Source: Perkinsus chesapeaki ATCC PRA-425 (taxonomy: Eukaryota; Protista; Perkinsozoa). From it: a stretch of DNA of 52,721 nucleotides. The position numbers and the translations under genes are program-made. The stretch spans positions 1-52,721 of the forward strand of contig JAAPAO010000205.1 in the NCBI GenBank assembly GCA_013115145.1. Direction: 5' to 3'. The notes beneath the pieces were generated by a model that ran no database searches, had not been told where the DNA came from, and saw only the letters and a list, made by a program, of their open reading frames with translations. Positions 1-47,166 of the stretch are shown here, one piece after another; the stretch's first letter is position 1; each line of letters starts with the position of its first letter.

Positions 1-350
1 TTAGGGTGTTCTGGCATTGTGTGCTATTGACCCAATGGCAAATTGTGTCACTGTGTCTCCATTTCTCTCCACTACGATGTATAAATAATCACGCCTAAAA
101 GAGAATAGCAGCGGTAGAGTTGTTGTCCGTTGAGTTACTGTCGTTGCACCGTTGATCTAGCCCTTGAACACGAGGTTGTGTAGACCGTCACAAATTTATT
201 GCAGTGAATGCTAGTTCACAAAAGGCCGCTGAGCTTAACTGAGGCCAACTGAGGACGCAACATCTCCAATGTGCTGGGACTTCCGATTACCAACACCGCA
301 ACTTCTACGTCACGCTGTCCGCTTTGCGCATGCGTGCATGTACACGCTTT

Positions 351-440
351 CTGCTTTGCCAACACCTCCAGATGCCAAGCTCCCTGCTTCGCCAAGACCT
401 CAAGATACCCAGATTCCTGCTTTGCCAGAACCTCTTGACT
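351..440. repeat. Imperfect 33-bp tandem repeat (about 2.7 copies), possibly coding for Pro-rich PALPxPxD units at the 3' end of an upstream gene
   Basis: CTGCTT(T/C)GCC recurs at 351, 384 and 417; + frame reads ALPTPPDAKLPASPRPQDTQIPALPEP; no complete gene model could be built. Confidence 0.4.
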
Positions 441-1332
441 ATGTAGTGAGGCCTCGGCGCGAGAAAGGGTAGGGTCCTCCGAGGAAGAGCGCACGCATGC
501 GCGCGCACATTTGACCACAGACTGCGCCGCACAGTCCAACTCTGATGTGCACCAGTTAGGGTGGCCAGTTAAGGTACTTTTATTGATGGCGACTATTGAT
601 TGTCCGTCTGGTCAGGAGGTAGGCTCAGCTTAGTTCGGAAACGAGCTGGGCAATTATCCGAGCTGCTAATTATCTGTTTATGACGAAAGCACAGAGGTGA
701 CATGTCTACGATATTTGGGACAATACTAGTGACATTATACCATTATACCCGCCATGCTCAGATTGATACGACTCGTTACTAACGAGCCGTGTCCCATTGA
801 CACATGAAAGTTTGATTATCAAACAAATAATGTCTTATTAGTCTCCGTTCAGAAGAATTTCTCATCGACGGCGCGCCGCGGCGCATCGACATAGCAGAAG
901 ACCGATATCATTCTCTGTGAATAGTATATAAAATTATTTCACCTATCAGTGCACCACTCCCTAAAGGATATTCAACGGCCACTACATATCGCTTGTCATT
1001 CGACAACCCTTACTATGACGTCCACTTCGGGTGCAAGTGGCCTTGTGCAACTTGCACAGTGCAAGTCATGATTTTAGTGGCGAGCGAGAGTACTAACATC
1101 GCGGATATATTTCTCGCTCGCCCAAAAATGCTCTGACCGTTACACTTTCAATGAGGAGTATCTTCACTCGTTTGTATAGCCTGGTAGGTTTCTATGAGCT
1201 ACCTATATTATATTCGAGGGCGATCAACTGTTCGGTCGCTAATCTATACCGTTATCGATGCTTTGCGTGCTTGTTTGTTTGACAATTCAATCCGTTACTT
1301 GGTGTAGATTAATGCTGCCTTTTGAGTAAAGC

Positions 1333-4300
1333 ATGGTGACCTATGCAATACTACTTATAATCTCAGTCTTCATTACCAATAAAGTTGAAGCCGCCGGTAA
1401 GGTTCCAGTTGTGTATATCGGATTTACTTTTGCACTTCAGATCCTGGTTACAACCCATATTGTAATGGACGAGGCCGCATCAATGAAACTGCTCAGACGA
1501 AGGAGAAAACCGTACAGCAAGTGGTTGGCAATATGTGCACCTGCGATCGTGGCTGGAGCTCGATACTCTTCGAGAACTTCACCGTCAGGTTTGCAATCTT
1601 TACTTTTATTTTTGTCATTATGCTGTTAGTTACTGTGTGGTTTGGATTGAGAGTGTGTATGATGCTCAGTTCGACAGCATTTACAGTATGCATTCTTTCA
1701 TTCGAGTTTGTTGTCTATTTCCTTGTTTCAGACTGCGTACCTTTGTCGTCGATAGAGTTCGAGCCCTTCTTCAAGCAGGGAAGTTGGGTGTGAGTGTGCC
1801 ATTGTGAATCTTCGCGGATCACAGCCTATTTCAGTTGCCACGACAAGTATCCAAAGTACGACCTCCTTGCCCCCCACGGTCCGTTAATCTTATGTAAGTA
1901 GCTGCTGTGTTTTACGAATGACACATTCTCTGTCTCAGACGAATACTCCGCGCCGTCTTGGTGTTCAACGAGATGGTTACCGAGGAAGCAAACTTGCCAG
2001 TGCTCGAGGAGCGACACGAGGCCGTAAGTCGAATTGCGTTTTTGTTGATTCTCAGATTTTTGGTCAGGTTGCCCGATTTCTGCAAGAAGGATGCTCGCCG
2101 TGTTATCACCCCGATATTCGCGGAGAACCCACCGGTGGATGTATCTCTCCCGAAGGTTGTCTCGAGCTCCTCATCTGGTAAGCTCTCTGCGACACGTCAG
2201 TTTGCTGAGTGGTGATGCGTTTAGTGAGCTACAATCCGTATTGTAATGGTAGAGGGAGTATAAACGAAACTGCCAGATTGAAGGAGTCCAATGTGACGAA
2301 CTTTGTGACGAACATGTGCAACTGCAATTCTGGGTGGACCTCGTTGATGAACACCGATCTGACAGTGCAGTAAGGGTTCGATTGTAGCACTAGTTGACTG
2401 CCGTTTTGGAAGATACTGTTTGGTTTGGACTCAGCCTACTTATGAGGCGCAACTCGACAATATCTACGGTGAGTTATGCTAATTATTATTGATTGTCATT
2501 TTTATTGGTAGACTGTGTACCCCTTTCAACAGTGGAGCATAGAGGAACCTTCACTGATGGTTACTGGGTGTAAGCTTAAAGGTTCCGAATGGTGAGATCT
2601 GCTAGGTCTTGTCCTACGCAGGTGCTATGACAAGTACCCTAAGTACGAGTTTAACGAGCCTTATTCTCCCCAACCTAAATGTGAGCCTTGCATGTTGCTT
2701 CGGACCTATCAGATGTCATTCATTAGTCGAATTCCGGGCCCCGTCGTGGTGCCCAGAAACATGGCAATCAAGGACACAAAGTTGTTACTGTGATAGCAGT
2801 GCGGATAAAGCGTAAGTCTTGGCAGAGGCTCCTGTGAAGTGTGGCGCGCTTCAGGCCTCCAGCGGTTTGTAAAGCCAGTGGCGGAAAGACTGTATTCCCG
2901 TCTTTCAGGGTGAATGAAGTCCCGAAAACGAACGGTAGGATTGCCGCTGTGAGATCTTCTGTGATGTTCTGTCAGTGGTTACCTTCGAGCCATTCTGCAA
3001 CGGTCGAGGACTATTCAATGAGACGGCTCAGTCGGCCAGCAATGTGGATGAGATGGGCCTTAACTTGTGCACATGTGATTCCGGGTGGACCTCTATGGTC
3101 TTCAAGGACTACAGTGTGAGGTAAGATGTGTTCGGAGGCTTTTTTTGTCGATGATACTCATTTTAGCTATTGTACTGTGTGGATTGGTAAGACCTACGAT
3201 AGCAAGTTCGACGATACATACGGTAGGAAATTTGTCGTATTTTCCTGGTTTTACGACGCTGTTGTTTAGACTGTGTTCGGACATCCACGATGACGTATCA
3301 GAAAGTGTTCCCGGTTGGCGAATGGGCGTGAGTGTCGTCTTCTTCACCTTCGGCTTGAATGTTTGATGCTCGCTCAGATGCTATGACAAGGAGTCCAAGT
3401 ACAAATTAGCTGCGCCACATAGTCCTGAGGTTTTATGTGAGTTGATCAGAATCACAAGGCGAAGAAGGATGTGTTTTCACTGCAGTCCGGTTCCAGGCGC
3501 CGTCGTGGTGCCCGAATAGGTGGTGGGTGAGAAGTCAAAGCTGCTACTGTAAGGATGATACGGACAAGCCGTAAGTTGCACTTGTAGTCTTTCGGTCATG
3601 GTTGTGCTTTAGGCTCGATGCCATTTGTAAAACGAGCAAGCAGAGCATCATATATCCTATCTTCAACGTGCATCTGCCCCCAGCGCCGCCTCGAGAAGTG
3701 ACTACTACGGCGCTGCCCACTGGTGAGTTTCGGATGAGCTCTTGTGGTTCATTGTCGTATATTTTGTGTTGTACAGCTGTGGACTTTGCCTATTATTGTA
3801 ATGGAAACGGCGAGTGGAACGGTACGGCGCAGTATAAGGAAAGCGACGCATCGACACTTGTTTTGAATCTGTGCAAGTGTGACGCGGGGTGGAGTTCAAT
3901 ATTGTACTCCAATATGAGCGCGAGGTGAGCTGTGGTCAAGTTGGTCAAGGCAATTTAGTGGCAACTGAGTTTGGTGGAACTCAGTTTCTGCACGGTGTGG
4001 ACGAAGAAGACCTACGATGAGACGTTTGACAGCAAATACGGTAGACTAGCGGGAATTGGCGGATTGAAGTCAATTGTATCTTTCAGACTGTATACCACTT
4101 TCGTCTGTTGAACATGAAGAGTTCTTCCCCAAAGGAGAGTGGGTGTAAGTACACTACCCTCTGGCAGTTGTTGAGGTATCTGGTATTCGTTCTCAGCTGT
4201 CCGAGGAAATATCCAGAATACGGCTTGTTGCCGCCACACGGGCCGCCGACTTTATGTGAGTCGAGCTGCCGTCAACAATTCTATTCTGGTATTTTAGACC

Positions 4301-5705
4301 ACCTTCAAGCGCCGTCGTGGTGCTCGGATCGATGGAGTGCTCGTACGCAGGTGTGCCGGTGTAAAAGTTCGGGCAGCTCGTAAGTCACTTACGGTTTGGT
4401 GCCGCTCGGTTGAAGGCGTTCGATCAGGCAACCGGAAATCTGTGTCGAAACTGGGCAAGATCACATTTATCCTATATTCGCTAAGATGCCGCCACCACCC
4501 CCTCCGACGACAACAACAACAACTACGACTACTACCACGACAACTACGACGACGACTACAACTACGAGCACCACTACCACAAGGACGACTGAGCGTTCAC
4601 CAGCCGTGGTAGTACCTGTCGAGACTACACGAGGAAGTACATCTACAGTGGTAAGTAGTAGGGCGACAAGCACCACTCGTACCACCACCAGATCGATTAC
4701 CTCCACTACCATTAGTGCCCAGTTTGAGAGAAGTGCACCCGTAGTGAGTAGCACTACTCCCGCTGTTACGAATATCGATTTTATGAGTACCTCTCGAGCG
4801 ATGAGCACTGTTGTTACGACTGGAGTAACGGTGGTTACCACAACGACCGTTACGACTTCGACCAGCTCGTATAGGCCTGCAAGTTCTAGAAACTTCACGA
4901 CTAGCTCATTGACTGAGAGTGTCGTCGATGTTACGACGGTGAATACCACCGCGGTTGGCTCCACGTCCTTGGAGGTGGTCGAGGGCGATTCCGACGAGTC
5001 CCCGGTGCGTCAGGTGGCAACGACGAGTAGACCTTTGTCTGGTGGTAACGACTCCTTAGAGGACCGGGGCGACATTGAAGTGACGACGACTATCGAACCA
5101 GGTATGAGATCGGTCGGTTTTAGTCGATCCTTATTTCAGAACTTTTCGATTGTGGAGAGCACGGCACATGGTCGGCAGAAGATGAGCGGTGCGTATGTGA
5201 AGACGGCTGGGAGAATGCCACGGACGACGAGAATCAGGAGTGAGTTGAAGGACACGTTTGGCGCTTTCACTGTGGCGGTGTTTTAGGCCATGCAGCGGGC
5301 TGGGGTTTGCCAGTGATGAGGGAGATGTAGGGAAGGAAGAACTGTTGTGGTTTATTAGTGCTTTTCAGGGCGGAGAAGCGCGAGCTTCGGGATCGGACGA
5401 CGGTTCGAGCGGTGGTTCCTGGGTTATTGTTTGCCTCTTGGCGGTGTTCGTGTTCGTTGTTGGGATAATACTGATGTAAGGAAGGACATCGTCAGTTGGT
5501 CTGGGTACGGTCGATATTTGTCAGGTTCAAATTCTGCCGAAATCGATGCGTGAAAGGACGTAACGATAGACTGATGTGGTTGTGGGAAATAAAGAAAACT
5601 ATTAAAAAGAAGCTACCACGCACCCACCCTCCGAGGAGATTCTTCTCCAGGCGATCGGCAGTGTCCTCGCCGGAGCCCCAGGGTGACGCCAGTGTGCTTA
5701 GTTGA
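1333..5705 (+). CDS. Type I membrane mucin-like surface protein: signal peptide + 4 Cys-rich modules + Pro/Thr stalk + EGF-like domain + TM + basic cytoplasmic tail (about 1000 aa, about 29 exons)
   Basis: Phase-consistent GT-AG model. SP exon 1333-1396 (MVTYAILLIISVFITNKVEA). Module-start exons 1441-1588, 2225-2369, 2976-3120, 3777-3924 (CNGxG..N-x-T..CxCxxGW), each followed by five exons (YCxVW; DCVP; WxC..KY..PH; APSWC..W..CxC; linker Cys). Stalk exon 4428-5101; EGF-like exon 5140-5239 (CGEHGTW..CVCEDGW..EPC); TM exon 5287-5475 (WVIVCLLAVFVFVVGIILM); last exon 5525-5705 with TGA. Confidence 0.85.
4507..4581 (+). repeat. ACN-codon low-complexity tract encoding poly-Thr of the mucin stalk
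   Basis: acgacaacaacaacaactacgactactaccacg... translates to a long Thr run after PPPPPP. Confidence 0.9.
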
Positions 5706-6129
5706 CTTATTGTTATATAAATTAATAATAAATTGATTAAACTGTCTATAATTAACGTTAATTGAGCTACCATCATGTGGTAGACGCAGCTTTAGTGAAG
5801 TATGAAGTTTTCTCTTTATCACCGGCAATCCGGAGTGGCAATCTGAATGAGTATGTCTCATCTTGTGTTGAGTTTGTTACCTCTGCGAGACATGTTTATC
5901 GGTAGGGTTTCAGTGGTGTTTATTATCTTTGCCAGCGTATAGTTAATCCTGTAGAGATTTATATTTGTACGTATTACATAAAGTACTCTTAAAGTGCTGG
6001 TTTTTGTTTGCCCTTCAGCTTGTCGTTAATTAATATTGTTTAAGTACTTCCAGCTCATCTTTATCTAGAGTTATTGTTGCTGTCCATGATGTATGTTCTG
6101 GGAGAGGTATGATGTGAATGTACTTGTAA

Positions 6130-6335
6130 GTGATAATGTATTTATATATTATTTCATATGTAGATATTTAGATATAATTGATAGAGTAAATAATTAAATA
6201 ATTAAATAATTAAATAATTAAATTAATATATAATCATATAATATATTTATAATATAATTATATATAATATAATATATTAATATATAATTAGTGTATAATA
6301 TATTTAATATAGATATAATTAATAGAGTATTTAGT
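6130..6335. repeat. Very AT-rich low-complexity tract ((TAAATAAT)n and (ATATA)n-like) upstream of the dynein start codon
   Basis: Almost pure A/T, e.g. taaataattaaataattaaataattaaataatt. Confidence 0.8.
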
Positions 6336-6683
6336 ATTTTACCTATTGATCTATTCCTGAGTAATTATTAGTAATCTTATCGTGTAAATCAAAGTCGGAT
6401 CTTAAAGTTTATTTTATTTAAAGTAGCACTGCCCATATCATGTGCGATGTCACCTTCGTACAAAGCATGCAAAGTTAACGGTTATTAGTGTACCATAATT
6501 AGGGCGGCTTAAGCTTGTGACTCGTAGTCAAGCATTATCGTTGCTTGTCGTCTTTTGTAATCAAGCATTATAGTTTTGTATTTTACGACTCAATACGATA
6601 ACTCAGTGGATAGCATTAGAGTTTTAAGTCATTTCACGGTTACACTTGCTATACTTTGTAATAGTACTTTCAACTTGTTTGTT

Positions 6684-9600
6684 ATGACGGTGGCTCCTCC
6701 TAGTGTAAGTAATGATCCGAGGGCATTATGGTTGAGTAAGAAGGTTAAGGAAGTTGTTGGAGTTACCGATGCTGAATGGAAAAAAATGTGAGTTCATCCA
6801 CCCGACTTATGAGGCGATATTGTTGGTGTGAATTTGATCGCGGCTAAGCGTGTTGGACGTGAGAGAGTTCTAGAAAGCGTGTCTGATGTTTGCTCTGGGG
6901 TTTCTGAGATTTATTAAAGTCAACTAGTTAACCGTAATCGTCATTTGCCTCGTGATAGAAGGTAGGGTTCTAAGATAGGAGTGATTTAAGTGAGCTTCGA
7001 GCGACCCCTAAAAGCGAGAACGGAGAAGCTCGTCGATTTAGGTTATCACAGGATGGCTCTGAGGGTAAGATAATAGATTGGCTTGAGGATGTGGGCAAGC
7101 AAGGAGATCTGTTGGTGTTTTATGAGACACCGGACAAGGTCACTGGCGAGAGGGTGGGTGGGTGCTATCTAGGTCGTTCGTTGGGGAGGTTGTTGAAGTG
7201 CTTTTGTGATTTAATGGCATTTTTCCTAAATCAAAGAAGTCAAGAAATCGTATAGTGAAATTCTTTAAGTACTCGGGTGGTCGTCATTTTGTTAATACAG
7301 TACTATACTGTCGAGATTTTGACAGCTTTTAACTGTTTGACAGCTCTTCGACCGCACAGGAACTCTCTCTCGAAATTGGCTTTCGTTTGGTTGCAATATG
7401 CTTGATGAAACTCGTCAGAATTTTAACTAATTTAGTAGTTTGCTTACGTGGTAGGATTGAATATATTCCGTATTAGTTACTTCGTGTATCAGCTGGAGTC
7501 CATGGTGATGTTAGTAGAGAGCTGTCTTCCTGTTTACACGGTGGCATGTACTTCATCAAGACGCTACCGGGGAGGATAGATACGACGGGAAAAGAGGTAA
7601 GAGGGGTATTATTACATTTGGAGTAATTTATTGTTACCTGTGAAAATTTTCGGGTGAGTTGCTTTCATTAGACTCGGGGACGGCGCTTGTATTTGTATTA
7701 TTTGTAAACACTTTAAGAGGACAACTTTTGATAAGGTGAACTTGAACTCTCCGAGAGGGTTTTTTCTGACTGCTTGTGTGCGGAGTGTAGACTTTAAGAT
7801 TGACCTCATCTCCGGCGATATACTGAATTTAGTATTGCTCACCCACCCGTGTGGCGGAGACACCAAGCAGTCGTTTGTGGGATATGCGAGTTGTGGTTTC
7901 AGATTAGCACAGCCATGCTGGACGGATGCACCTTTGGGATGTTAAATGGAGACAGCCGAGCATTGTCTGATGTCCAAGGTGTTATGGAACATCTTTTGTT
8001 ACCAGCGATAGAATACAAGTAGGGAGAATGCGATATTTTGTACTTTACCAACTTGGTGAAATATAAATATATAAGGGCAGTTGGCAATGTTGAGTGTACC
8101 TGTTGATTGATATTATTCTGATAAATCTCAGTGTGATATGTCATGTAGATATGTCTATCTGGTGTGTTGGAAGCTATGTGTTATGTGACTCTCACGTGTC
8201 TGTAATTAAATTCAATTGATTAATTGAATTAATTAGTAATGCAATTAAATTAATTGTGTCGAAGAGAATGTAACAACGTTTAAATAACTGAATTTTCGTA
8301 ATAAAGTGTACACAATCTAGAAGTATGTTCTTTAGGGGGCATTTTTCAAAAGGTCACGTGCTGATCATTCACTGTCTGAACCCTTTGTAGGATAGTGTAA
8401 GTGATTCTCGTCGCGGAGTAATTTTTCAAAGCTCAAATTAAGTGAAATTGCGAAGTTGTGCAGCACAACTTCTTTGTGATGGTTATTCGGTATTAAGCAG
8501 ATTGTTATAAGACATTTTATCAAGCGTTATTATACAGATTATACGACAGTTGTATCTAAGATTATATCTTTCTTGGTAACGGTTATTTAGCTCGGCTCAT
8601 TTTACGACATTTTATCAAATCGGTTAGTATGTAGGAACGATTGTCGCTTATTAGGCCACCCCGCAGCGTAGCTCATGCTGGTCGGAACCGGTCATCATTG
8701 ACAGAATCATTACGGAGTTCAAGAAGGCTGTCTGTGCCGCAAGTTGGGACTGCGGAGATTTCGAGCGTGGGGAGTGCGACAGGTGAGCGGAAGGGGGAGA
8801 GCGGATGGATAATATTTCGGTAGCATATATTACGTAATATCGAAATATTACCTATACGATCATCGTGTCCTGGATGTCGCCGGGCATTAGCGCCCGCATC
8901 GAATGTTATGCGTAAATAACTGCACGGATTTCTGACACTTGAACTTTTCCATATGCTGACCATGATAAGCGATACCAATCATCGGCGTCACATATTAGTG
9001 TGAAGAACAACAGGGGGTGATGTTCCGCGCTTTTAGCTGTGAAATATGAATTTCGCATATTGCGGGTAAAACTCTATAAATGGCTTCCGCATGCACATGA
9101 GTAAGAAGCGCAATCGTTGTGTACACTGAGGGTTATAAATATATAATGTATATCGTAGCATTAGCTGTAGTGATGCATGGATGGTATATCGTAGCGTTAG
9201 CTGTAGTGATGCATGAATGGTATATCGTAGCATTAGCTGTAGTGATGCATGAATGGTATATCGTAGCATTAGCTGTAGTGATGCATGAATGGTATTCATA
9301 TAGGGAATGAGGACGGGGGTTTATACTTGCCGCTTTACAACGGTAGAATGTTGGTTGAAACTTTTGAGGACGTTTAAGGGGCGTTGGGGATGTTGTTCGG
9401 GCATGGTAATTCGAGATATGGTAGCTGATGTGATTTAGTTGGAGATTAGGGATCTACTTTGTCACGATTATTACGTACGGCGTTCTGGGATGATATGGGC
9501 TGCTGCTTATTGTTGAACTCAGATGGTGATGATGGCGAGAGTTTGACTGAGATGTCGGAGGCTTCCGAGAAATCGGTAGAGTCGGAGGCCAACGCGGATG

Positions 9601-12600
9601 AAGAGGATGAGAACGGACGGCTGGTGCAGTTGGGGGGAGAGGTTAAGGAGGATGTTATGATGAATGCTAACAAGTTTAATCAACACTTGGGACAAGTGAC
9701 TAATCAGGTGAGATGGGTAGGAAGACACCTGCCGACGGGAGGGTTCGCAAATAGAAGCTGCCACCCACGACCCATGACTGGTCATACACCAGTCATAAAG
9801 GATGCGACTCATGATATTCTCTCTATTTGCAGCGTGTAACTGCAAATAGAATGACAGACTATCATTGATAGCGAGTTTCGCGCGAACCAAAAATTAATAA
9901 GTTTTATGCCGCTATGTTCAGCACTTGTGTACTAACCCTTCCCCCATAACTTATTCGGAACGTACTTTATAAAATACGACTTGCTTGTAAAGGGTGTATT
10001 CTTTCAGCGGTTTTGTATTCACCATATTTTCCTTATTTGGTTTTTAATAAAAAGGAAATAAGACCTAATGATAACAACTCGGTCTATCTATATAGTACGA
10101 GGCTTATTCAAATAATAGATTCGTAACAGTTTACATCACGTTTCGTGGTTCGTCGAGTTGCCGTTTTCGTTGTTGTTAATGGTGCCTTTACAGGTTTATG
10201 GATCATCTATTATTAATATCCCAGAAGGGATTGACTTTATTGGATTAATGAATAAGTTGGATGATGATGTATCACCTGATAAGGTGATTGAATATGAGAA
10301 GGAAATTAAAGGCTGTATAGATGTGATAGAAGGATGGGTAAGAGGAGAAGAGGGATGGTATGTTTTTATTCGGGTTCTGGGTTTCGGGTTTTGGGTTTTC
10401 GGGTTTTCACCCCTATGTACGATAATATATAATCAATTAAAGTAGTATAAAATATGTAATAGCAATATTATCGTCACGTCTTAGATTATGTACTAATATA
10501 TTGAAGAGTTTCATTGCTCCATAAATAAGGAGTAATGAATGCGCAATGCGAGTTACACGAATCTTCGTATGACCTAAAAAGTGATTCATTATATCGTGGA
10601 ATGATCCGCATACTATCGAAATGCATCGTACTTGCGGCTGCTGCTGGAGCAGCTCTGCGTAACGCTTACTCTGACAGGGCTCGAGAATATCGGATCTCTT
10701 GGAATCGGAATCAGCGATTAGCGGGTCGGCAGACCAGCACCCGATGGCTGAGATACTTTTTTGGCGAGACAGAAGCGGCCGTTTGTCGAGTTTATTTGAG
10801 CAGTTTCAGCTAGGTTCGTGTCAGCAGGTAGAAAGAGATAAATAAGTGGCGCGTGAGATTATACGTAGTAGGTTATCGGAGTAGTTGAGAAGTATGTCGA
10901 GTGTTGTGGTGGGTTGTCTGAGTCGGAGGAGAGAGTTGGAAGGGTTTTGGGGATATTTAAGGAAAAAAGGACGGTATTACACAAACTGCTGTTGGAGGCA
11001 AAAGATAATGTAATATAGGGTGGTAGTGTTAATGTTAGCTTCATATGAGCAGCTCCTACTTGATATTGAATAGTCGCTATATCTATTATGATTATTCACT
11101 TATTACGTTCTCCTGGTATAGTAGTTATTCTGTATGTATTAATGTAAAGAAATAAGTTATCGGCTTAATATAAGGATTATATAGCAAAAGATATAATGTG
11201 ACGTGGAAGCATAGTTGTATTTACGTTAGTATAGCATTTCCGTAACGATAACTGTCACAGATAACTGGCAACATGCTGTCGAACAGCGGCTTGATTAATT
11301 AGGTTAAGTTTCTAATGACGTTGGAGAGGCACTTAAAGAAGCTCACTAACGGGGGTATGTCTGAGATTACGGAGACATTGCCTAACTTGCTGAACGCATT
11401 GAGGATGGTGTGGATAGTTAGCAGGTAGTAGAAGGTGGAGGATGTTATGGATTGGTCGTAGTGCCGAAGTGTGGAGGGTCGCATGTAGGCAATTAGTATG
11501 AGGATCAGTAGTTTACATCACGGTTTAACCGTGAGGACGACTGGCCACCTCGAGGCAGGACACTTGGAATATTTGTGATGGATAAGATCTCCGATTGGGC
11601 AAGCGTTAACGTGAAGCCTGAAGCGATGTGCCTTCATTAAGGTATCCTCTGTTTTTGGGAAGGTGCTGGATTGTATGCTTCCTTCACATCCCTCAACGGG
11701 TGTATTAGCTGCTTGGTTAATGCACCGAATCGGGTGCGGCGTGAATGTTAGTCGAGCCAGGCGGCGGGGCAGCTGGTGGTCTCTTTTAGGTATTATAATA
11801 CTGATGAAAGGATGGAGCCGCTGTTGACGAAGATTGGAGAACAACTGGCAAATAGAGTTGACAAGCAGATAAGTGTGAGAGCATTGTTGAGGAGGAGCCC
11901 GGTGAGGGCGGGAGCGATCGTGAAGGAATGCAAGATTGCTTTGGACGAGTGGGAGAGGAATTATATGCTAACGAGAGCGAGGATCGAGGAGAGCGGATCG
12001 GACCATAGGTGGGATGGCGGATGTATTAATGATGCGGTGCATGAAACGGTTGATCGATTTGAGTGTCGAAGCAGTGCCGGTATAGAAATGTTTCACGTAT
12101 GCTATTTTCTGTAGTCCGATTGAGAGGAGCGTATTTTGGTTGTGTGTGGGTGTTGCTAAGGTTAGAGTGGGGTAGCAATGGTAGAGTCATGGGCCAGTGA
12201 TAGGACTCTGAAGGGTGTAGGAAAAATGAATGATTAGTACATCCGTTAAGCGGGCCTGCATCTGATGTCATCCAGCAAATTCCGGGTAGAGTAGCAGCAG
12301 CAGAAGTCGGTATCATTGAGCTGAGAGCTTGTGAACCTTCTTCCGAGTGGGGTTCACGTCTGACTGTAGGTGGGAGTTTGATCGTATTAAGTTATTCAAG
12401 AGAACAAAGTACATGGCAAAAGTGTGTGGTGATTTGATGGAGATTATGAAGGTATTGGAGCAGTTCTATAAGTTTTTGGGTCCAGAGTTGAAGGAGGTAA
12501 GGGCAGGACTGAAGTTAGCATCGGCTGTGTGGTCTAGTGGTATGATTCTCGCTTAGGGTGCGAGAGGTCCCGAGTTCAATTCTCGGCACAGCCCATGCAT

Positions 12601-15600
12601 TTTATTCAGGTAACTGGCGATCCGATCGGCGTTGACAATCTGCTCGAAGAAGTGAGCGGCTCTGTGATTGGATTCAAAACCTTCAATGAGTGTTTCGATG
12701 AAAAGCATCGGCGGGCGTGGGATAAGGAAATGCTGCAGTTCCGAGAGAAGACTGTAGAAATTGAAGACAAAGCCATTGTGTTTCTGGACACGCGATTCAG
12801 GAAGGTAACGCCTGTATGGGACGGCGAGCAAAGTTGGGGCGGTGTAGATGTTGTGACGTGACGTGTGGTTAATGGTTTGAGACGTGCGAGCTCGGTGTTA
12901 GGGCTCGTGGTGACGCCCTTGTGTTTTATTGGCAGATGTGTTACATTTGTTGCCAAGCCCGTCTAGCTCAGTCGGTAGAGCGCAAGGCTCTTAACCTTGT
13001 GGTCGTGGGTTCGAGCCCCACGGTGGGTGTGCTTATTGTCGCTTGAACTCGTGTAGTTGTATGCCGCAGTTTCCGTAGAGAGTGTACTGCGCGTGAATTG
13101 TCAGATAAACTTCGTGGGTTGTCATCCTGGAAAACTTACCTTTAGAAAGTTAACTTTGAAAGCTAGAATTCGTGGCCGAGTCTGTCTGGCGTTATTAGGA
13201 TTACACTTCTTGAACTTACATAAAGTGGTACATGAAAAGAGTACTCCGATGACGCTGGGACAGCTGTGAATCGATTGTTAGTTGCTATTAGTTTGAATAT
13301 TAAAATGTACCAGGGCCCAGGAATCTTGTTGCTTAGTTACGGTCGGCTGAAGGGGCATTTCAACTGTTGCAAAATTTCAAATCGATTCAAAGCAGGGATA
13401 GAATAAATGACAAAATGAAGGAGAAGTTTGCCGATATTGTCGTGCAGTATGGGAATGAGGTCAAGAAGATGACGGAGGTGTTCCAGAGACATAGTAAGCG
13501 GGGAAGACGATGGCAGCGGCTGCTGCTGCTGATCGGTCATAGAGGAAGGATGACAAATGTTGAGCCTAGCTGCTCGTTAGGGGCGCGTCCGCTTATATTA
13601 TTTGTCAAGGATACCATTTGCTTTGACGTCTACTCACCTCTGAAATTCAACTTCACGTCAAATCTAACCTGCTTATCGGTCAAAAATCGTTACTAAGATT
13701 TGCATTCATTCATATAATTTTCCGCCGTTGTGGAGAATAGGTTTTTTGATTATGCCGATCCTTCGGTCGTATCCTTTATTTTTTCAGAGAACCATCCGCG
13801 TATCGCTAAGAACGCTCCTCCAGTGTCGGGCGCCATAGCATGGGCTCGCAACATCCTGGAACGAGTGAAGCGCCCTATAATGGCGTTCAGGAGTATGCAG
13901 TCCTTGCTGGACAGTCCAACTGGGCAACAGGCTTGCGGGGAGTATATAGAATTGGGGAAAGCAATTTTGAAATATGAAAAGGAGTTATTTGCTGAGTGGC
14001 AAAGGAGTGCTGAGGATAAGGCAACTGAGTGTTTGGGAAGGAGCATCTTGGCGATTGATAAATGTGAAGGCGATGCAAGCTCGTCCACTTATGTGGTCAA
14101 TTTCGCACCGGAGTTGATCGAACTGATGAAGGAGGCGAGGAATTTCGATTTAATTGGCGGTTTTGAGGTCCCTGGAGGAGTACTGAATTTAGCATTACAG
14201 ATGGATAAATATAAGGATTATGCCGAACAGTTGAGGGTTATGTTGCAGAGTTATGAGGAGGCTATTGGAGGCTTGTCAATGGTAGTAGGTGGGGAGGAGC
14301 AGTGTCGTTTGTAGTGCGCTGTCTCATATATTTGATAGGGGGTCCAAAATATTGGCTGTGAATTTTTGGCATCAGTTTGTCATTTAACGGAGGGTTTCTT
14401 ACGTATCAAATAATGACTCGAGTGATTCTGCTTGATCTTTCGGCAAAGTTGATTGTAACTTAGCATTTAGAATGATCATCTACTGATCCAGTTGATAGAG
14501 ATGATAATATTTACTCCCTACGTGGTGATATTAGTATTATATATATTACTGCGGTTATATTCATTATAAGAGGATACATATTATTTTATAATAATTTGTT
14601 CACGTCTTATTATTATTCTCGATTTAGAGTTCATTGCAGTTGCCTATCTTGAAAGTGATGACGGTTGGCGAGCAGCTTTTCATGAGTTCACAATTTATTT
14701 TGCGTACGTAAGTAGAAGGAAGTCTTACTGTTTAGAGATTATCCAGCATGTGCTGCTGTCCGTCATAATCCTGTTTACTGTGCAGGTACAGTGCAAAATA
14801 CTGCATACTCAGATAAGGGATCTTCACAAGTGTCTGAGGCCTGGTTTAACCCCATTAAATTGGAACAGTCTCGGGATCATAGATTTCATCGAGTCGGCCA
14901 GTCGGGGGATAGCGGCATTTAAGAATGTCAGAGAGCAAGTGGAAAAATCGGAGGAAAGAATTGAGGCAGTTGTCGAATCGATCGAACGATCGATTTTGGT
15001 GCGGCCGTTTGATTGGACGAAAACTGACATTAGTCCGTCGGCTTCGACCAGCACACTCGCGGAGGAGTCGGTGGGATCGTCGAGTAGTGACGTATCGAAA
15101 ACGATGGACGTTATGGAATTTTACGACTTTTTTGAGACCCATCGGGTGGCAGAGGTGGAAAAGTTGGTTGATCAATACGAGGCGATCGGACCGTTTTTGA
15201 TAAAGATTGAGGAGACGACGGCGGGAACGAAATCGGGTGCGGCAGAGAGTATGAGAGAATATTATGTTTATTGGGAAAGGAGGATATTTAATGCTATCAC
15301 TACGGCATTAGTGAGAGGGATCAGCACCTTCCAGGTAGGGAGTCTAAATCGATACGGGTTTCAAAATGTAATTGTCTTTGCGCACACAGTAGTACGATTG
15401 AGACGTTTGATTGGGTCTAGGCTGATCACCGATGATGATGTATTAATGAGGTTGTCCATAGGGAAAAACTAGGGTATATGTGGCTCAAAATACCTTTCGA
15501 GGTATTGAAGACGTTTGGATCGGCTTATTATTATGCGCGCTTGTTTCTGGCGATACGACAGTATCGTTTTTCAGGTGTTGTTGGACTCGGCAACGGAGAG

Positions 15601-18600
15601 GCCACCGTTGATAAAAATTCGGGCAGAATTCAACCCTCCGGAAGTTGTGGTTGGTTCACTGCATGGAGTGTTCAAGTTGCTGACGAAGCTTCTACAGAAT
15701 GTGTTGCACAGTGCTGGGTCATTCGTGAGGTGGATGGATGGCACATGTTTGATGGTGAGCCAGACCATACCTATCTGGGTCTTGGGGAGGGAATCCTCCT
15801 CCTTGTATTTGACCTCGTTATTCGTTACGTGCCCCTCTTTAAATTATGAACAGGGTGGTTATCGGACCTGTTGTGGATGAGAAGCTTGGTAAATAGGAAG
15901 TTGAATGATCGCTCAGTTGTAGAATAGTCCGCTCGATTGCGCTGTCCTCGGCTGTTCAGCAATATGTGATTAATCAGGTCCCGACGCAATCTGCTCAACT
16001 TGAGGAGGACAAAGCTTTAGCGTTCACTTTCTATAAGGATGTGTCAGAGAATCCTGTGCTGGTAGAGATGACGATGACCATTCAAAACTCAGTGCAGCAA
16101 GTGTTCCAAATCATAAACAAGTTCATGCGAAGTTGGAAAAAATATGATACCCAGTGGGGGCTGTGGGACGTGAAAAGACGGCAGAATTTGGAGAGATTGG
16201 CGGTGGACAAAAAGCCTTCGCTCCACTATTTCGATGCGCACTTGAGGGTGTATAGGAATCTGATTGATACAATGGTGGCTTATAAAAGGGACCATGATGT
16301 TGCATTTGTCAGAGTCGACTGCAGCGCTGTTATTAATGGTGAGTTTGGCGATTGGATCTCTGAATTTTAGGAGTCTTGGGAAGTGTGATGGTGGCTGCGC
16401 TGTGGTGTAGGTATCCGGTCTCAAGCTCAGGAATGGATGACTGACTATGCGAGGATACTTGGTGATATAGCGTCGAAGGAATTGGAGAAAATACGAGTAG
16501 GAGGGTTTGTACCAGTCATGACAAGACGACCATCAGAAAGCACCTGCCACGGTTAAGCTGTCCTGTCTGTTCTCATTATCTTCTACTTGCTAATATGAAC
16601 ACAGCGCCTTTTGGTCGGATATTATCGACTTGTAGACTGATGCACTTTCCTGTTTTATCGCCCAGCATTCGTTGAGGAGATTTGATGTCTTCTCGAAAGT
16701 AGGACAAAGGAAATCTTTGTCAGCTCGAATAGTTATTCGAACGGCATTTTGATGATATTTTCCTTTAGACGGAGCTGAAGGATTACAGATCCAATATAGA
16801 TTTTATGCCTACTAAGTTGGAGGAACTTAAATCGATGTTGAATACTATAACAACTGTAGAAGCGGTGAATATGGATATGGAGATTAGGATAGGAGAAGTT
16901 AGAGAAAAGTGAGGAGGAATGGCTACTTGAGGGTTGCTGGGAAGAAATTGGGCCTCCGTATAATATATAGTGCATTTGTTTTTATATAAGTGTACTTGGC
17001 CTTGGCACAGTGGTAGTAGGACTTGATCTATGAAGCTAGTAGTGGTAGGAGGACTTCATATTGAGTAGCCGATCTATGAAGATTCGGTTTCTCGGTTTTA
17101 ACGATAATATTTGGTATGTTGTCTCGCATGGAGGATGCGTAGATCGGATGTGACATACTTGTATATATTCATAATAGAGCTTGGAATCTCAAAGCTGTTT
17201 ATGCATACGACTCCTTGACTCCTTGACTGATGACGGTGCATATAGTACAACCCTTGGAATGCTAACAAGCTCTTATTTTCTATGTTCCTTGTGGAGATCA
17301 TTTTCGTAGACCAGATGATTGAATAGGGCCAACTAGCTGTATGTTGCTTACCTGGCTTAGTTACCGCACATTGCTGTTATATAAGTGCAAGATGAAGCCA
17401 GAAGATATGAACTATGCGGAGAGCCTGCCAGAAGTGTGGAGGAGTTTGAAGAAGTATTCTAGAGCGAAGGATGAGGCGTTGGAGAAGAGCAAGATTGAAT
17501 TTGCTGAGATTACTAAACAGGAGGTGCTAAGCAGGGATGGTGTCGTTGGACGGTAGCTGTGATGTTACGACGAGTATGTCACGCTCATTGACGTTCGAGG
17601 AAATGAGACTCTGGGAAATGAGTCAAGAAGTTGGGCAGTCAGAAATTACTAATGTGAATCGATAATTAATGTGCGGAATGCGATGAAGGATGCGTATGCC
17701 CGTCTAAAGTTGTTATAGTAGTGCTGACTATTGTTAACTGAAGTTGTTATAGTAGTGCTGACTATTGTTAACTGAAGTTGTTATAGTAGTGCTGACTATT
17801 GTTAACTGAAGTTGTTTTCAGGTTGTAGACTTCAGTGACCGATGTAGCAAGCTGCTGGATGAGTTCAGTAGCGGAGGCCCAGGTAGGAGCAAAGGGGACA
17901 GAAGTTGTGTTGGAATAAGCACACCCACCGTGGGGCTCGAACCCACGACCACAAGGTTAAGAGCCTTGCGCTCTACCGACTGAGCTAGACGGGCTTATTA
18001 GTGAGGTTTCGCATGCTGCCTCAATTGCTTTTTTCAGGGACGGATGACGTGAGTCTCGAAGAGGGAGCGGAGTTGATGAAAAAATACCAAAATGAGGTCA
18101 ACCAATGCCAGAATCGCAAAGAGGTCCATGAAGCTAATTTCTGGCTTCCTATGGATGTTATGTGTAGGAGCTGGTTAAATCGGAGATGCTGTTCAATCTG
18201 CCAATAACGAGCTACGTCGAACTGGTTATTGTGGAGAAGCATTTAAAGCTGCTGAAGAATGTCTATGACATTTATATGGAGCATAGGAAAATGGTAGTAA
18301 AGGAGGGTTGATTTTTGGGAAGGTTTTCGGGGAAGTGATTTTCTTGTCGTAAAAATATGGGAAATTGGATTTAGTTTGAGCGGCGCAGGGACAGTAGTCC
18401 GTGAACGCAGACGCAGATTTAGCTATGCGGCACGCGGACCGCTGAGTGTTAGACTTTCCCGGTCGTATCTTTGAAGGTTGGAATTCCAGCCGTGGAGTAA
18501 TGTGTTGAGTATGTGGAGGTCGGCTGCTAGAGGTAGCTGGCGCTTCGAGGATGCATGTGTGGGCGCGGGCGTCATCCCTTGGTGAAAAATAATGCACTTG

Positions 18601-42906: not shown

Positions 42907-44169
42907 ATGATCTTAGCGCTAGCCACCTTCTTTCAACTACTTGCGGCCTCCTTTGGTGATGATTTCGAAGCCCCTCTGGGTATATACTCGCCTAGGAGTC
43001 GATCTACGGCTGATTCTAATGTGAAGTTAACGTTCTTAGATAACGGCAGGGTTGAGTATGAGGTTCTCACTCCCCAATCAGAAAGCAGTCCTTTCGCATC
43101 CTTCCCGGCGAGCATGGTGTCTTCTTCCGTTGTGTCTGTAGTCGTTACGCAGTTCCAACTGGACTACTGGAGGATGTACCATCCAGGCTCTTTCGAAGAC
43201 TTGGGCCTTCAAATCTTCTTCTACGACGCCGCTACAGATAGGATTACGGTTAACAGCATCGGCCGGGCTTTTGAGATTCTCCACTCTTCAGACCCAGGAG
43301 AAGGTCCTGGCTCGGTCGCCGATGTAAGGAAGCCCAATGGCATGTATCGAGCTGTGGAGCGCGGCATTGACATTACTATAGAGTTTGTGAACGGTCGAGT
43401 TACCTATAACTTTGAGGTTGGAGACGTCTCATATTCGTTCCCATTTGATGTCGACTTCTCGATGGGAAGCTCAAGTCTTATCAAGGTTTTTGTACCGCGT
43501 AGCCAACTCCACGGGCTTCATGGTAGATTCCCTGGGCTGTCAGAAGATTATTTCTATACGAACCTGGGCTATGATCCTGCTAAAGATGAAATCACTTTTC
43601 TCCTTGAGAGTTGGCGCGCTGTTATATTGAGGTTGACTGAGCCCTCTTCCCCTCCCGCCCGGACTCGCATCCCAACTACCACTAGTACGTCTACAACAAC
43701 TACATCTAATGCAGAGGACCGCCCCCATCGTCCATTCGGTGACTACTGTGTTGATAGGCACACCGCTAAGATGTCTCTAAGCTTCAAGGATCAATATACA
43801 GTGACCTTTGCGGCAGTGTATCGTGATACTCATCTCTTGGCTCGAGGTGCAAGATATGATGTTATTGAGGAGTCTGGTCAAGTGGTAATATCTGTAGATG
43901 CTGTAAACTCGGACTTGAACGGAGAACTCCGTAAAATGGACTGGCATGGTATGACTCGTCTCAACTTCATATTTGATCCAGTCCAGAATGTCGTTATGCT
44001 GGAAGACCGTGGCCTCATCGCTCATATGTACATTGGCCTAGAGTGTGCAGCGGCCATCGAGTCCCCGCCGGCCAAACCCAGCGGTGGTGGGGGCGGTTCT
44101 TCAGGAACTCACTTCGGTGATCTGAGTGAGTTTATTAAGCAAGTATTGGAACAACTCCTTCAGATATGA
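42907..44169 (+). CDS. Secreted protein (copy C, 420 aa): signal peptide + two PxGxY domains + Thr linker + third PxGxY domain; intronless
   Basis: ATG 42907 follows a TCTCTTTCAG acceptor-like site; SP MILALATFFQLLAASFG; APLGIYSP, RKPNGMYRA and HRPFGDYC domain starts; clear homology to copies A and B. Confidence 0.9.
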   Translation: MILALATFFQLLAASFGDDFEAPLGIYSPRSRSTADSNVKLTFLDNGRVEYEVLTPQSESSPFASFPASMVSSSVVSVVVTQFQLDYWRMYHPGSFEDLGLQIFFYDAATDRITVNSIGRAFEILHSSDPGEGPGSVADVRKPNGMYRAVERGIDITIEFVNGRVTYNFEVGDVSYSFPFDVDFSMGSSSLIKVFVPRSQLHGLHGRFPGLSEDYFYTNLGYDPAKDEITFLLESWRAVILRLTEPSSPPARTRIPTTTSTSTTTTSNAEDRPHRPFGDYCVDRHTAKMSLSFKDQYTVTFAAVYRDTHLLARGARYDVIEESGQVVISVDAVNSDLNGELRKMDWHGMTRLNFIFDPVQNVVMLEDRGLIAHMYIGLECAAAIESPPAKPSGGGGGSSGTHFGDLSEFIKQVLEQLLQI

Positions 44170-44704
44170 TTTATATCAAATGAATCTTGGACTCTATGCT
44201 TCACATGTAAATAGCATAATCCAGATAGTTCGACTATCGTAGTTGCCCTTTCAAAGGGCCCCTTGTCCTTCGTTGACCTTTTACTTATTATTATGTAAAT
44301 ATCTCATGATAATCTTTCTGTTTCTCTGAGACTCTGAGCAACTTCCTCGATAACCCGTTTCAACAAAGTCTCCAGCCGCGGTGTTATTAATTGTTTCGAC
44401 GGGTGGGGAGTCTATTTGATCAGATCAATCGGTACTGGAGAGAGTGACGAGGAGAGGAATCACGGTAGAGGGGGTGTCGTGGGTTGTCACCCCGCAGTAT
44501 GTATTGATGCTGCTAATAACCCCAAGAGTCTCTTGTCAAGAGAGTTTATTGTTTTTTTGTCTGTCTTGCAACACAACCCTATTCAAGGAACGTCCGACTG
44601 GTTGACAATGTCAAGCAGAGGAATTGACAACTTGACATCGCGACTAACATGGCACGATGGTCATGCAACATATCAGACCATGTGTGGCAACTTGATTCTT
44701 AGCA

Positions 44705-47105: not shown

Positions 47106-47166
47106 TTTGCGAAAGTTGTGCCTTTCCGTAACGCTGCCCACTCCTCAGGGAACACCACAAACATTA

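What the first reader, a model, noticed from the sequence alone, without database searches (positions are those of the whole stretch)
1333..5705. Candidate new surface-receptor family built by duplicating a six-exon, 10-cysteine cassette four times
The ORF track hides this gene. Splicing by phase gives four ~150-aa modules spaced 751-801 bp apart. Each is encoded by six exons with the same alternating phase-1/phase-2 introns, so the cassette is phase-symmetric and can be added or removed in frame. Each module starts with an EGF-like core (CNGxG..CxCxxGW..YC) lacking one canonical Cys and continues into a Trp/Cys-rich part (DCVP, WxC, PH, APSWC..W..CxC) that I do not recognise as a named domain. 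All four keep an N-x-T sequon just after CNGxG (NET, NET, NET, NGT). The modules sit on a long O-glycosylatable Thr stalk above an EGF-like domain and a TM helix. This architecture resembles a parasite adhesin or host-recognition receptor; the function is inference.
Basis: partly seen in the sequence, partly recalled or inferred. Interest (0 to 1): 0.8.

Follow-up and report, generated by a model that had tools for sequence, protein, structure and literature searches.

The report
Four-module cysteine-rich Perkinsus surface glycoprotein
This is a real, heavily spliced gene of a Perkinsus-type shellfish parasite for a membrane-anchored, sugar-coated surface protein carrying four copies of a 10-cysteine module. 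The module is found only in Perkinsus and matches no described domain beyond a weak EGF-like head; its function is still unknown.

Summary
Splicing 28 canonical GT-AG introns (38-60 nt) from 1333-5705 (+) gives an open 1026-aa reading frame. The protein has a signal peptide, four 159-172-aa 10-Cys modules (41-51% identical), a 200-aa Thr/Ser stalk, an EGF-like domain, a TM helix and a basic tail. Each module has the same six exons (148/145, 56, 58, 59, 85/82, then a linker exon) with alternating phase 1/2.

Orthologs exist in P. marinus (XP_002774045.1) and P. olseni. Both are annotated 'hypothetical protein', lie next to the same dynein gene, and have GT..AG at 47 of 48 homologous intron positions. 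The gene is therefore not new, but it is undescribed.

An exon-A profile searched against 1.84 billion representative proteins, and a whole-module profile searched against the 5.8-billion-cluster collection, found only Perkinsus proteins. Pfam gives only marginal EGF hits on the CxCxxGW motif and nothing on exons B-F. A PDB sequence search found nothing. Two AlphaFold runs failed (pLDDT 36 and 41), so the fold is unknown.

The quadruplication is old and the count of four is fixed in all three species. The TM and juxtamembrane tail are the best conserved parts (82% and 75%). An adhesin, receptor or sensor role is inference. The scan also noted a one-module paralog in this window.

Novelty: undescribed genus-restricted module in a familiar mucin-EGF-TM architecture. 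Interest is moderate to low.

The parts
1333..5705 (+). Whole coding region: 29 exons, 28 GT-AG introns, 1026 aa. Introns: 1397-1440, 1589-1629, 1686-1731, 1790-1834, 1894-1938, 2024-2067, 2178-2224, 2370-2412, 2469-2511, 2570-2621, 2681-2726, 2812-2854, 2935-2975, 3121-3166, 3223-3269, 3328-3377, 3437-3485, 3571-3612, 3723-3776, 3925-3984, 4041-4086, 4145-4196, 4256-4297, 4380-4427, 5102-5139, 5240-5286, 5327-5368, 5476-5524.
   Evidence: The spliced frame is open. It is colinear with P. marinus P0014 and P. olseni P0015. GT..AG is found at homologous positions in all three species.
1333..1396 (+). Exon 1: signal peptide (MVTYAILLIISVFITNKVEA|A), ending in phase 1.
   Evidence: Hydrophobic N-terminus read from the sequence. 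The orthologs start the same way.
1441..2177 (+). Module 1 (aa 22-193), exons A-F: 1441-1588, 1630-1685, 1732-1789, 1835-1893, 1939-2023, 2068-2177.
   Evidence: Closest to module 1 of P. olseni (63%) and also to module 1 among the P. marinus modules (56%).
2225..2934 (+). Module 2 (aa 194-354), exons 2225-2369, 2413-2468, 2512-2569, 2622-2680, 2727-2811, 2855-2934.
2976..3722 (+). Module 3 (aa 355-525), exons 2976-3120, 3167-3222, 3270-3327, 3378-3436, 3486-3570, 3613-3722.
   Evidence: Closest to module 3 of the orthologs at 58-59%.
3777..4500 (+). Module 4 (aa 526-684), exons 3777-3924, 3985-4040, 4087-4144, 4197-4255, 4298-4379, plus the first 24 codons of exon 4428-5101 (Cys10 and the IYPIF motif).
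4501..5101 (+). Thr/Ser-rich mucin-like stalk, 200 aa, 34% Thr and 16% Ser, no Cys, 3 N-sequons. It opens with a run of 20 Thr.
   Evidence: Only about 20% identical to the P. marinus stalk, which is 76 aa long.
5140..5239 (+). Membrane-proximal 4-Cys EGF-like domain (CGEHG..CVCEDGW..C; the fourth Cys is in the next exon).
   Evidence: Pfam EGF_Teneurin 25.6 bits, above the 24.3 cut-off, E=1.3e-5.
5287..5475 (+). Acidic/Gly-Ser juxtamembrane segment and TM helix (TM about 5420-5475), interrupted by a probable in-frame 42-nt phase-0 intron at 5327-5368.
   Evidence: Kyte-Doolittle maximum. Removing the intron gives a gap-free alignment to P0014. The TM is 82% identical to P. marinus.
5525..5705 (+). 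Cytoplasmic tail, 59 aa, 16 Lys/Arg. Its membrane-proximal 40 aa (FKFCRNRCVKGRNDRLMWLWEIKKTIKKKLPRTHPP..) are the best conserved soluble part. Stop codon at 5703-5705.
   Evidence: 75% identity to P. marinus over the first 40 residues. No Pfam match.

Best explanation
A conserved, single-copy Perkinsus gene encodes a type I membrane glycoprotein. A signal peptide directs it into the secretory pathway. Four tandem 10-cysteine modules sit at the tip of a long, probably O-glycosylated Thr/Ser stalk. The stalk is followed by a small EGF-like domain, one TM helix and a short basic cytoplasmic tail.

Each module has two parts. The head is a 4-Cys EGF-like unit (CNGRG..CxCxxGW..YC) with a ~24-residue insert carrying a conserved N-glycan site. 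The second part is Trp/Cys-rich (DCVP, WxC, DKYPKY, PHGP, PSWC..RW..R.Q.CxC, C..I.P.F) and has no detectable relative outside the genus.

The four modules arose by tandem duplication of a six-exon, phase 1-1 cassette. This happened before P. marinus and P. olseni split, and probably before the window's species split from them. The count has been kept at four since.

The most likely role (inferred, not shown) is an exposed binding or sensing array held away from the membrane by the stalk. The strongly conserved TM and juxtamembrane tail would serve sorting, lipid anchoring (a Cys pair that could be palmitoylated, a basic amphipathic WLW stretch) or contact with a cytosolic partner.
For: Shown:
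- Open spliced frame with 28 canonical short introns.
- Identical exon lengths and phases in four modules.
- 41-51% identity between modules, with 10 Cys aligned.
- Orthologs P0014 (P. marinus XP_002774045.1) and P0015 (P. olseni) are colinear at 41% and 50% identity.
- The same dynein heavy-chain neighbour lies downstream in P. marinus.
- All module exons recur in both ortholog loci, with GT..AG at 47 of 48 homologous positions.
- P. marinus and P. olseni modules pair by position: M1, M2 and M4 pair with UFBoot/SH-aLRT support of 84/85, 88/86 and 98/98, and M3 pairs by identity at 63%. Window M1 and M3 are closest to M1 and M3 of the orthologs.
- Pfam: the membrane-proximal EGF passes the EGF_Teneurin cut-off, the heads give sub-threshold EGF hits, and exons B-F give nothing.
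- Only Perkinsus proteins were found among 1.84 billion representatives and in the 5.8-billion-cluster collection.
- TM 82% and tail 75% identical, against modules at 48-63% and stalk at about 20%.

Inferred: glycosylation, surface exposure, and a binding or sensing role.
Against: - There is no RNA evidence from this organism.
- There is no structural model (AlphaFold pLDDT 36 and 41), so 'new domain' rests on negative sequence searches only. A profile-profile search against Pfam/PDB could not be run.
- The tail has no recognisable signalling domain.
- There is no evidence for localisation, a ligand, or a link to the host.
- Window modules 2 and 4 do not group clearly with their positional counterparts. 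The age of the quadruplication relative to this species therefore rests on M1 and M3 only.
Confidence: 0.6

Rival explanations
1. Cell-wall or envelope integrity sensor. It would work like the fungal Wsc1/Mid2 sensors: cysteine-rich heads engage the parasite's own wall, the glycosylated Ser/Thr stalk acts as a spring, and the short conserved tail recruits a cytosolic signalling partner.
For: - The order of parts is the same: Cys-rich head, long Thr/Ser stalk, single TM, short conserved tail.
- Perkinsus trophozoites are walled (general knowledge).
- A paralog in the same window joins a one-module ectodomain, stalk, EGF and TM to an ORF with an EF-hand pair. This suggests the family can be wired to signalling.
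Against: - The resemblance is purely architectural.
- There is no sequence similarity to the WSC domain (no Pfam hit).
- The tail has no known motif.
- The stalk length varies from 200 to 76 aa between species. This suits a spacer, but is not specific to a spring.
Confidence: 0.15
2. Mainly a glycan carrier. On this reading the protein matters as a membrane mucin that presents O- and N-glycans on the trophozoite surface. One possible example is the Gal/GalNAc-bearing ligands that oyster galectins CvGal1/2 bind when the parasite is taken up. The modules would then be structural.
For: - A 200-aa stalk with 50% Thr+Ser and 11 N-sequons in the ectodomain, two of them conserved in most modules.
- PMC7053492 reports that CvGal1/2 bind exposed Gal/GalNAc on P. 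marinus trophozoites, and that the parasite-side moieties were still being characterised.
Against: - Purifying conservation of 10 Cys, several Trp and motifs such as PHGP and PSWC..RW across 11 aligned modules of three species argues that the modules themselves are functional.
- Many other mucin-like genes are noted in this genome, so nothing singles this one out as the galectin ligand.
Confidence: 0.12
3. The module is not a new domain. It would be a string of degenerate EGF-like or laminin-EGF-like units: C1..C2xC3..C4, a C5-C6 loop, then C7..C8xC9..C10. The protein would then be an ordinary multi-EGF membrane mucin.
For: - The head and the membrane-proximal domain are both 4-Cys EGF-like.
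- The C7-x10-C8-x-C9-x11-C10 spacing mimics the head's CxC pattern.
Against: - hhalign of the head profile against the tail profile gives a probability of 1%.
- No Pfam EGF model touches exons B-F, even at E<=10.
- The tail is rich in Trp, Pro and His motifs that are not typical of EGF.
Confidence: 0.1
4. Gene-model artefact or pseudogene: the periodic ORF pieces are relics and are not spliced into one message.
For: No transcript data were available here.
Against: - 28 of 28 introns are canonical, 38-60 nt long, and restore one open frame of 1026 codons.
- Independent annotations in two other species splice at the same places.
- Synteny and intron positions are conserved.
Confidence: 0.03

Closest known systems
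EGF-like domains (Pfam EGF clan: EGF_Teneurin PF23106, JAG1-like_EGF2 PF21795, EGF_2 PF07974)
   Same: The membrane-proximal domain passes the EGF_Teneurin cut-off. Each module head carries CNGRG ... CxCxxGW ... C, which is the C2, C4-x-C5 and C6 part of an EGF.
   Different: - The heads have only 4 Cys (the EGF C1 and C3 positions are absent).
- The heads carry a ~24-residue glycosylated insert between 'CNGRG' and 'CxC'.
- Single heads score 11-18 bits, below the cut-offs of 22-27.
- The remaining ~110 residues of the module (exons B-F) match no EGF model.
Perkinsus marinus XP_002774045.1 (Pmar_PMAR011915) and P. olseni FOZ63_030980 / FOZ62_002412 / FOZ63_008880 'hypothetical proteins'
   Same: These are orthologs. 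They have the same four modules, stalk, EGF, TM and tail, the same intron positions, and the same dynein neighbour in P. marinus.
   Different: - Identity is 41% (P. marinus) and 50% (P. olseni).
- The stalk is 76 aa in P. marinus against 200 aa here.
- The public models are flawed: the P. marinus model skips module-1 exons D/E, and the P. olseni model retains an intron and is truncated.
- None of them has been described or named.
Membrane-tethered mucins of animals (MUC3/12/13/17 type: mucin domain, EGF-like domain, TM, short tail)
   Same: Ser/Thr-rich O-glycosylatable stalk, then an EGF-like domain next to a single TM and a short cytoplasmic tail.
   Different: There is no SEA domain and no sequence relation. 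Here the stalk carries four N-terminal Cys-rich modules that animal mucins lack. The comparison rests on general knowledge and was not tested here.
Fungal cell-wall stress sensors Wsc1/Mid2
   Same: Cys-rich N-terminal head, long Ser/Thr stalk, single TM, short conserved cytoplasmic tail.
   Different: No WSC domain was detected (Pfam). There are four heads instead of one, plus an extra EGF-like domain. This is an analogy only.
Apicomplexan micronemal EGF-containing escorter/adhesin proteins (e.g. Toxoplasma MIC6/MIC8 type)
   Same: Alveolate type I membrane proteins with EGF-like domains close to the TM and a short conserved tail used for sorting.
   Different: There is no detectable homology and no mucin stalk in those proteins. 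The Perkinsus tail is basic with WLW rather than acidic. The comparison is recalled from general knowledge and was not tested.

Membership tests
EGF-like domain (Pfam EGF clan) | Score above the Pfam gathering cut-off for an EGF model | tested here: met
   Membrane-proximal exon 5140-5239: EGF_Teneurin 25.6 bits against 24.3. In P0014 the same domain scores 24.9 against 24.3.
EGF-like domain (Pfam EGF clan), module heads | Each head scores above a gathering cut-off | tested here: not met
   Single heads: EGF_2 14.6-16.3 against 22.1, and EGF_Teneurin 10.8-18.3 against 24.3. Only the sum over four heads in P0014/P0015 reaches JAG1-like_EGF2 27.9-28.2 against 27.
EGF-like domain (Pfam EGF clan), module heads | Six cysteines forming the C1-C3, C2-C4, C5-C6 disulfides | tested here: not met
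   The heads have four conserved Cys. The pattern fits C2, C4, C5 and C6. Disulfide pairing itself cannot be tested here.
Any described domain, for exons B-F (Trp/Cys-rich part) | Significant match to a Pfam model or to a PDB sequence | tested here: not met
   No Pfam hit at E<=10 on exon-E pieces or on whole modules in P0002/P0003/P0012/P0014/P0015. A PDB profile search gave one spurious hit at E=0.81. Fold comparison was not possible because the models had pLDDT 36-41.
Perkinsus four-module protein (orthologs of Pmar_PMAR011915) | Colinear full-length similarity, same module number and same intron positions | tested here: met
   blastp gave 41% over 1028 columns to P0014 and 50% over 648 to P0015. 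Exon-by-exon tblastn. 47 of 48 GT..AG at homologous positions.
Perkinsus four-module protein (orthologs of Pmar_PMAR011915) | Conserved genomic neighbourhood | tested here: met
   A dynein heavy chain lies immediately downstream in P. marinus L001. In the window, the scan's own notes (unchecked first-reader notes) place dynein exons downstream; I did not verify this.
Fungal WSC-type wall sensors | WSC domain (Pfam PF01822) in the head | tested here: not met
   No WSC hit in any Pfam scan. This is an architectural analogy only.

The most novel reading that the evidence does not exclude
Exons B-F encode a new disulfide-rich fold confined to Perkinsus. Together with the one-module paralog in the same window, which may be joined to an EF-hand cytoplasmic domain, it would define a parasite-specific receptor family. 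The modules would bind a host (bivalve) or wall ligand, and the signal would pass inward through the conserved basic tail or through Ca2+-binding EF-hands.
Probability: 0.15. Interest if true: 0.6.

Novelty: new variant of a known kind. Interest (0 to 1): 0.35.

Why it matters
Perkinsus species cause Dermo disease and related diseases of oysters and clams. The parasite surface molecules that meet host lectins and hemocytes are largely unidentified (PMC7053492). This gene gives a well-defined, conserved, genus-specific surface glycoprotein candidate with an uncharacterised 10-Cys module. It could be tagged, knocked out or expressed to test adhesion, uptake or wall sensing, and it could serve as a Perkinsus-specific marker.

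It is also a clean example of domain amplification by duplication of a multi-exon, phase-symmetric cassette in an alveolate with very short introns. It also shows that the public gene models of both orthologs need correction. Lineage-restricted Cys-rich modular surface proteins are common in protists, so the finding is useful rather than surprising.

Tried and rejected
1. The spliced window protein has no reference, so it could not be sent to the search or fold tools. I used single-exon references and then the orthologs' protein ids instead.
2. The search for homologous proteins with P0002 was swamped by Thr-run words and returned only itself.
3. P0014 residues 20-660 found only P0015. The module alignment A2 found only Perkinsus fragments.
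5. A degenerate exon-E DNA motif scanned over JGI metagenomes gave 8 loci. All are out-of-frame chance hits, 7 of them in contigs of 60-64% GC.
6. AlphaFold2 on P. marinus module 3 with 12 rows gave pLDDT 36. With 34 rows, including window and P. marinus exon fragments, it gave pLDDT 40.6. I did not run fold search because such models give meaningless matches.
7. hhalign of head against tail and middle found no internal repeat.
8. The PDB sequence profile search found nothing.
9. Literature searches for the ortholog accessions and for Perkinsus EGF/mucin surface proteins found no description.
10. Pseudogene or artefact was rejected on splice-site, frame and ortholog evidence.
11. Recent duplication or gene conversion was rejected. 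Exon nucleotide identity is only 56-73%, introns are no more alike than that (0.47-0.65), and modules pair by position across species.
Full report
**What is in the sequence**

The ORF list for 1-8000 shows only short ORFs, plus one 266-aa Thr-rich ORF. A three-frame read shows the same peptide motifs recurring four times in rotating frames.

I set the splice sites by hand. With ATG at 1333 and the stop at 5703-5705, 27 GT-AG introns of 38-60 nt give a CDS of 3123 nt with no internal stop.

Comparison with the P. marinus ortholog then exposed a 15-residue insertion in the juxtamembrane segment. It corresponds exactly to a 42-nt stretch from GTAGGG to TTTCAG at 5327-5368. Removing it as a phase-0 intron makes the two proteins align without a gap. 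The final model has 29 exons and 1026 aa. Exon GC is 51% and intron GC is 44%.

**The cassette**

- Modules start at 1441, 2225, 2976 and 3777, a spacing of 784/751/801 bp.
- Exon lengths are A 148/145/145/148, B 56 x4, C 58 x4, D 59 x4 and E 85/85/85/82.
- The linker exon F is 110/80/110, and in module 4 it is fused to the stalk exon.
- Phases alternate 1/2, so each cassette starts and ends in phase 1.
- The four modules are 41-51% identical. They share 10 aligned Cys and a set of invariant Trp, Gly and Pro residues.
- At the DNA level, repeat families recur with the same period at 60-83% identity and are confined to exons.
- Equivalent exons are 56-73% identical, and equivalent introns score no higher than that (0.47-0.65 by the same global alignment; no random control was run).
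- A degenerate motif for P.WC..RW..R.Q.C.C hits three modules, against none in 100 shuffles.

**Protein anatomy (numbering of the 1040-aa first model)**

- Signal peptide: residues 1-21.
- Modules: 22-193, 194-354, 355-525 and 526-684.
- Stalk: 685-884, with 34% Thr, 16% Ser and no Cys.
- EGF-like domain: from residue 885.
- An acidic and Gly/Ser juxtamembrane segment follows.
- TM helix: WVIVCLLAVFVFVVGIILMF.
- Cytoplasmic tail: 59 residues with 16 Lys/Arg.
- There are 11 N-x-S/T sequons in the ectodomain. The one just after CNGxG is present in all four modules here.

Across 11 modules from three species, that first sequon is kept in M1-M3. A second sequon just before Cys4 is kept in 9 of 11.

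**Relatives**

A profile of the four exon-A peptides (A1) was searched with HMMER against 1.84 billion representative proteins. It gave 9 hits at E<=1e-3, of which only three are real:

- a P. olseni cluster;
- a P. marinus cluster;
- a Logan fragment whose matching part is identical to P. marinus module 4.

Cluster look-up named them. They are P. marinus XP_002774045.1 / Pmar_PMAR011915 (852 aa; P0014) and several partial P. olseni 'hypothetical proteins'.

Two further searches found nothing outside Perkinsus. P0014 residues 20-660 found only P. olseni FOZ63_030980 (P0015). A 12-row module alignment found only Perkinsus fragments.

A motif scan of JGI metagenomes gave only chance hits. No paper mentions the accessions.

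**Orthology and gene structure**

The window protein aligns end to end with P0014 (41%) and with P0015 (50% over 648 columns). In P. marinus the next gene downstream is a dynein heavy chain. The scan's own unchecked notes place dynein exons downstream of this gene in the window too; I did not verify that.

tblastn of each window exon peptide against the two loci recovers every module exon, in order and at the same sizes. This includes module-1 exons D and E, which the P. marinus annotation skips.

I checked the bases at the positions predicted from the window's phases. GT..AG is present at 47 of 48 internal introns across the three species. The one miss comes from a coordinate that I set one codon off in P. 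olseni M3. This is strong evidence for the junctions that does not depend on transcripts.

**Age of the duplication**

In a maximum-likelihood tree of the 12 modules, P. marinus and P. olseni modules pair by position:

- M1, M2 and M4 pair with UFBoot/SH-aLRT support of 84/85, 88/86 and 98/98.
- M3 pairs by identity at 63%.
- Window M1 and M3 are most similar to M1 and M3 of the others (56-63% and 58-59%).
- Window M2 and M4 are long branches without a clear partner.

The quadruplication thus predates the P. marinus/P. olseni split, and probably also the split from this species. The number four has been kept. The cassette is formally removable in frame, but I see no evidence that it is being gained or lost.

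**What the module is**

- Single heads give sub-threshold EGF hits on CxCxxGW: EGF_2 15-16 bits and EGF_Teneurin 11-18 bits.
- Summed over four heads in the orthologs, JAG1-like_EGF2 just passes its cut-off, at 27.9-28.2 against 27.
- The membrane-proximal domain passes EGF_Teneurin, at 25.6 against 24.3.

The heads have four Cys. Read against the EGF pattern, these are C2 (CNGRG), C4-x-C5 and C6. Two canonical cysteines are therefore missing (the C1-C3 pair), not one.

Nothing in Pfam matches exons B-F, whether as pieces or inside whole modules. A PDB profile search found nothing. hhalign gives no support for the tail being a repeat of the head.

Two AlphaFold2 runs on P. marinus module 3 gave pLDDT 36 and 40.6. 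I made no fold search and the fold remains unknown. The alignment is simply too shallow, with about a dozen modules from three species.

**How it probably works (inference)**

The parts are a signal peptide, Cys-rich modules, a mucin stalk, an EGF-like domain, a TM helix and a short tail. This is the layout of an exposed, glycosylated type I surface protein.

Conservation is uneven:

| Region | Identity to orthologs |
|---|---|
| TM helix | 82% |
| First 40 tail residues | 75% |
| Modules | 48-63% |
| Stalk | about 20%, and 200 aa here against 76 aa in P. marinus |

They fit a variable spacer that carries conserved folded units, anchored by a tail under strong constraint.

The tail has a CxxxC pair next to the membrane that could be palmitoylated, and a basic amphipathic stretch (RLMWLWEIKKTIKKKL). 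It has no Pfam match.

I rank a binding or sensing array first. Whether the ligand is host material, parasite wall or something else cannot be told. The rivals are a Wsc1/Mid2-like wall sensor, a mucin-type glycan carrier for host galectins (PMC7053492), and a string of degenerate EGF units.

**Family context**

On the minus strand at about 48898-47150 there is a paralog with one module. I read its exons A-E. It keeps the intron phases and Cys1-4 and Cys7-10, but has Val and Phe in place of Cys5 and Cys6. It is followed by a Thr run, an EGF-like piece and a TM segment.

A downstream ORF at 46748-45540 has an EF-hand pair (EF-hand_7, 34.7 bits). This agrees with the scan's notes s1-221294 and s1-221133. 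I did not test whether the EF-hand ORF is spliced to the ectodomain.

**Verdict**

This is a real, conserved gene. The module is undescribed and confined to Perkinsus by all the searches I could run. The gene itself is already deposited as a hypothetical protein, the function is inferred, and the fold question stays open. The finding is a new variant of a familiar kind, a membrane mucin with EGF-like and lineage-specific Cys-rich modules. Interest is 0.35.

Noticed in passing
window 5327-5368: An in-frame 42-nt phase-0 intron (GTAGGG..TTTCAG) lies in the juxtamembrane exon. Retaining it adds 14 residues (VGKEELLWFISAFQ) without a stop, so both forms are readable. The ortholog alignment favours splicing.
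   Followed up: yes
window 47150-48898 (minus strand) and 45540-46748 (minus strand): A one-module paralog with the same intron phases lacks Cys5 and Cys6. It is followed by a Thr run, an EGF-like piece and a TM segment. A downstream ORF carries an EF-hand pair (Pfam EF-hand_7, 34.7 bits). The two family members flank the dynein gene on opposite strands.
   Followed up: partly
L001:10526-10709 (P. marinus GG680918.1) and L002 (P. olseni JABANO010008498.1): The public ortholog models are flawed. P. marinus XP_002774045.1 skips module-1 exons D and E, which are intact in the DNA. The P. olseni FOZ63_030980 model retains an intron in module 1 and ends in out-of-frame sequence.
   Followed up: yes
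L001:11206-11208: P. marinus module 2 has Trp (TGG) where all other modules have Cys5, while Cys6 is kept. This is either an assembly error or an unpaired cysteine. It bears on the proposed Cys5-Cys6 disulfide.
   Followed up: no
window 2000-38000 against 44000-48000: GC skew follows the direction of transcription. G exceeds C on the + strand (skew up to 0.39 at 18-20 kb) over this gene and the region the scan's notes assign to the dynein gene. The skew turns negative where the paralog lies on the minus strand.
   Followed up: no
window 12523-12594, 12957-13029, 17922-17994: tRNA-Pro(AGG) and two tRNA-Lys(CTT) genes, the Lys genes in opposite orientation, lie inside the span that the scan's notes assign to the dynein gene.
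   Followed up: no
window 6160-6340: A very AT-rich low-complexity block (taaataat / tatataat repeats) lies in the intergenic region downstream of this gene. There is also a run of N (an assembly gap) near 44890-45000.
   Followed up: no
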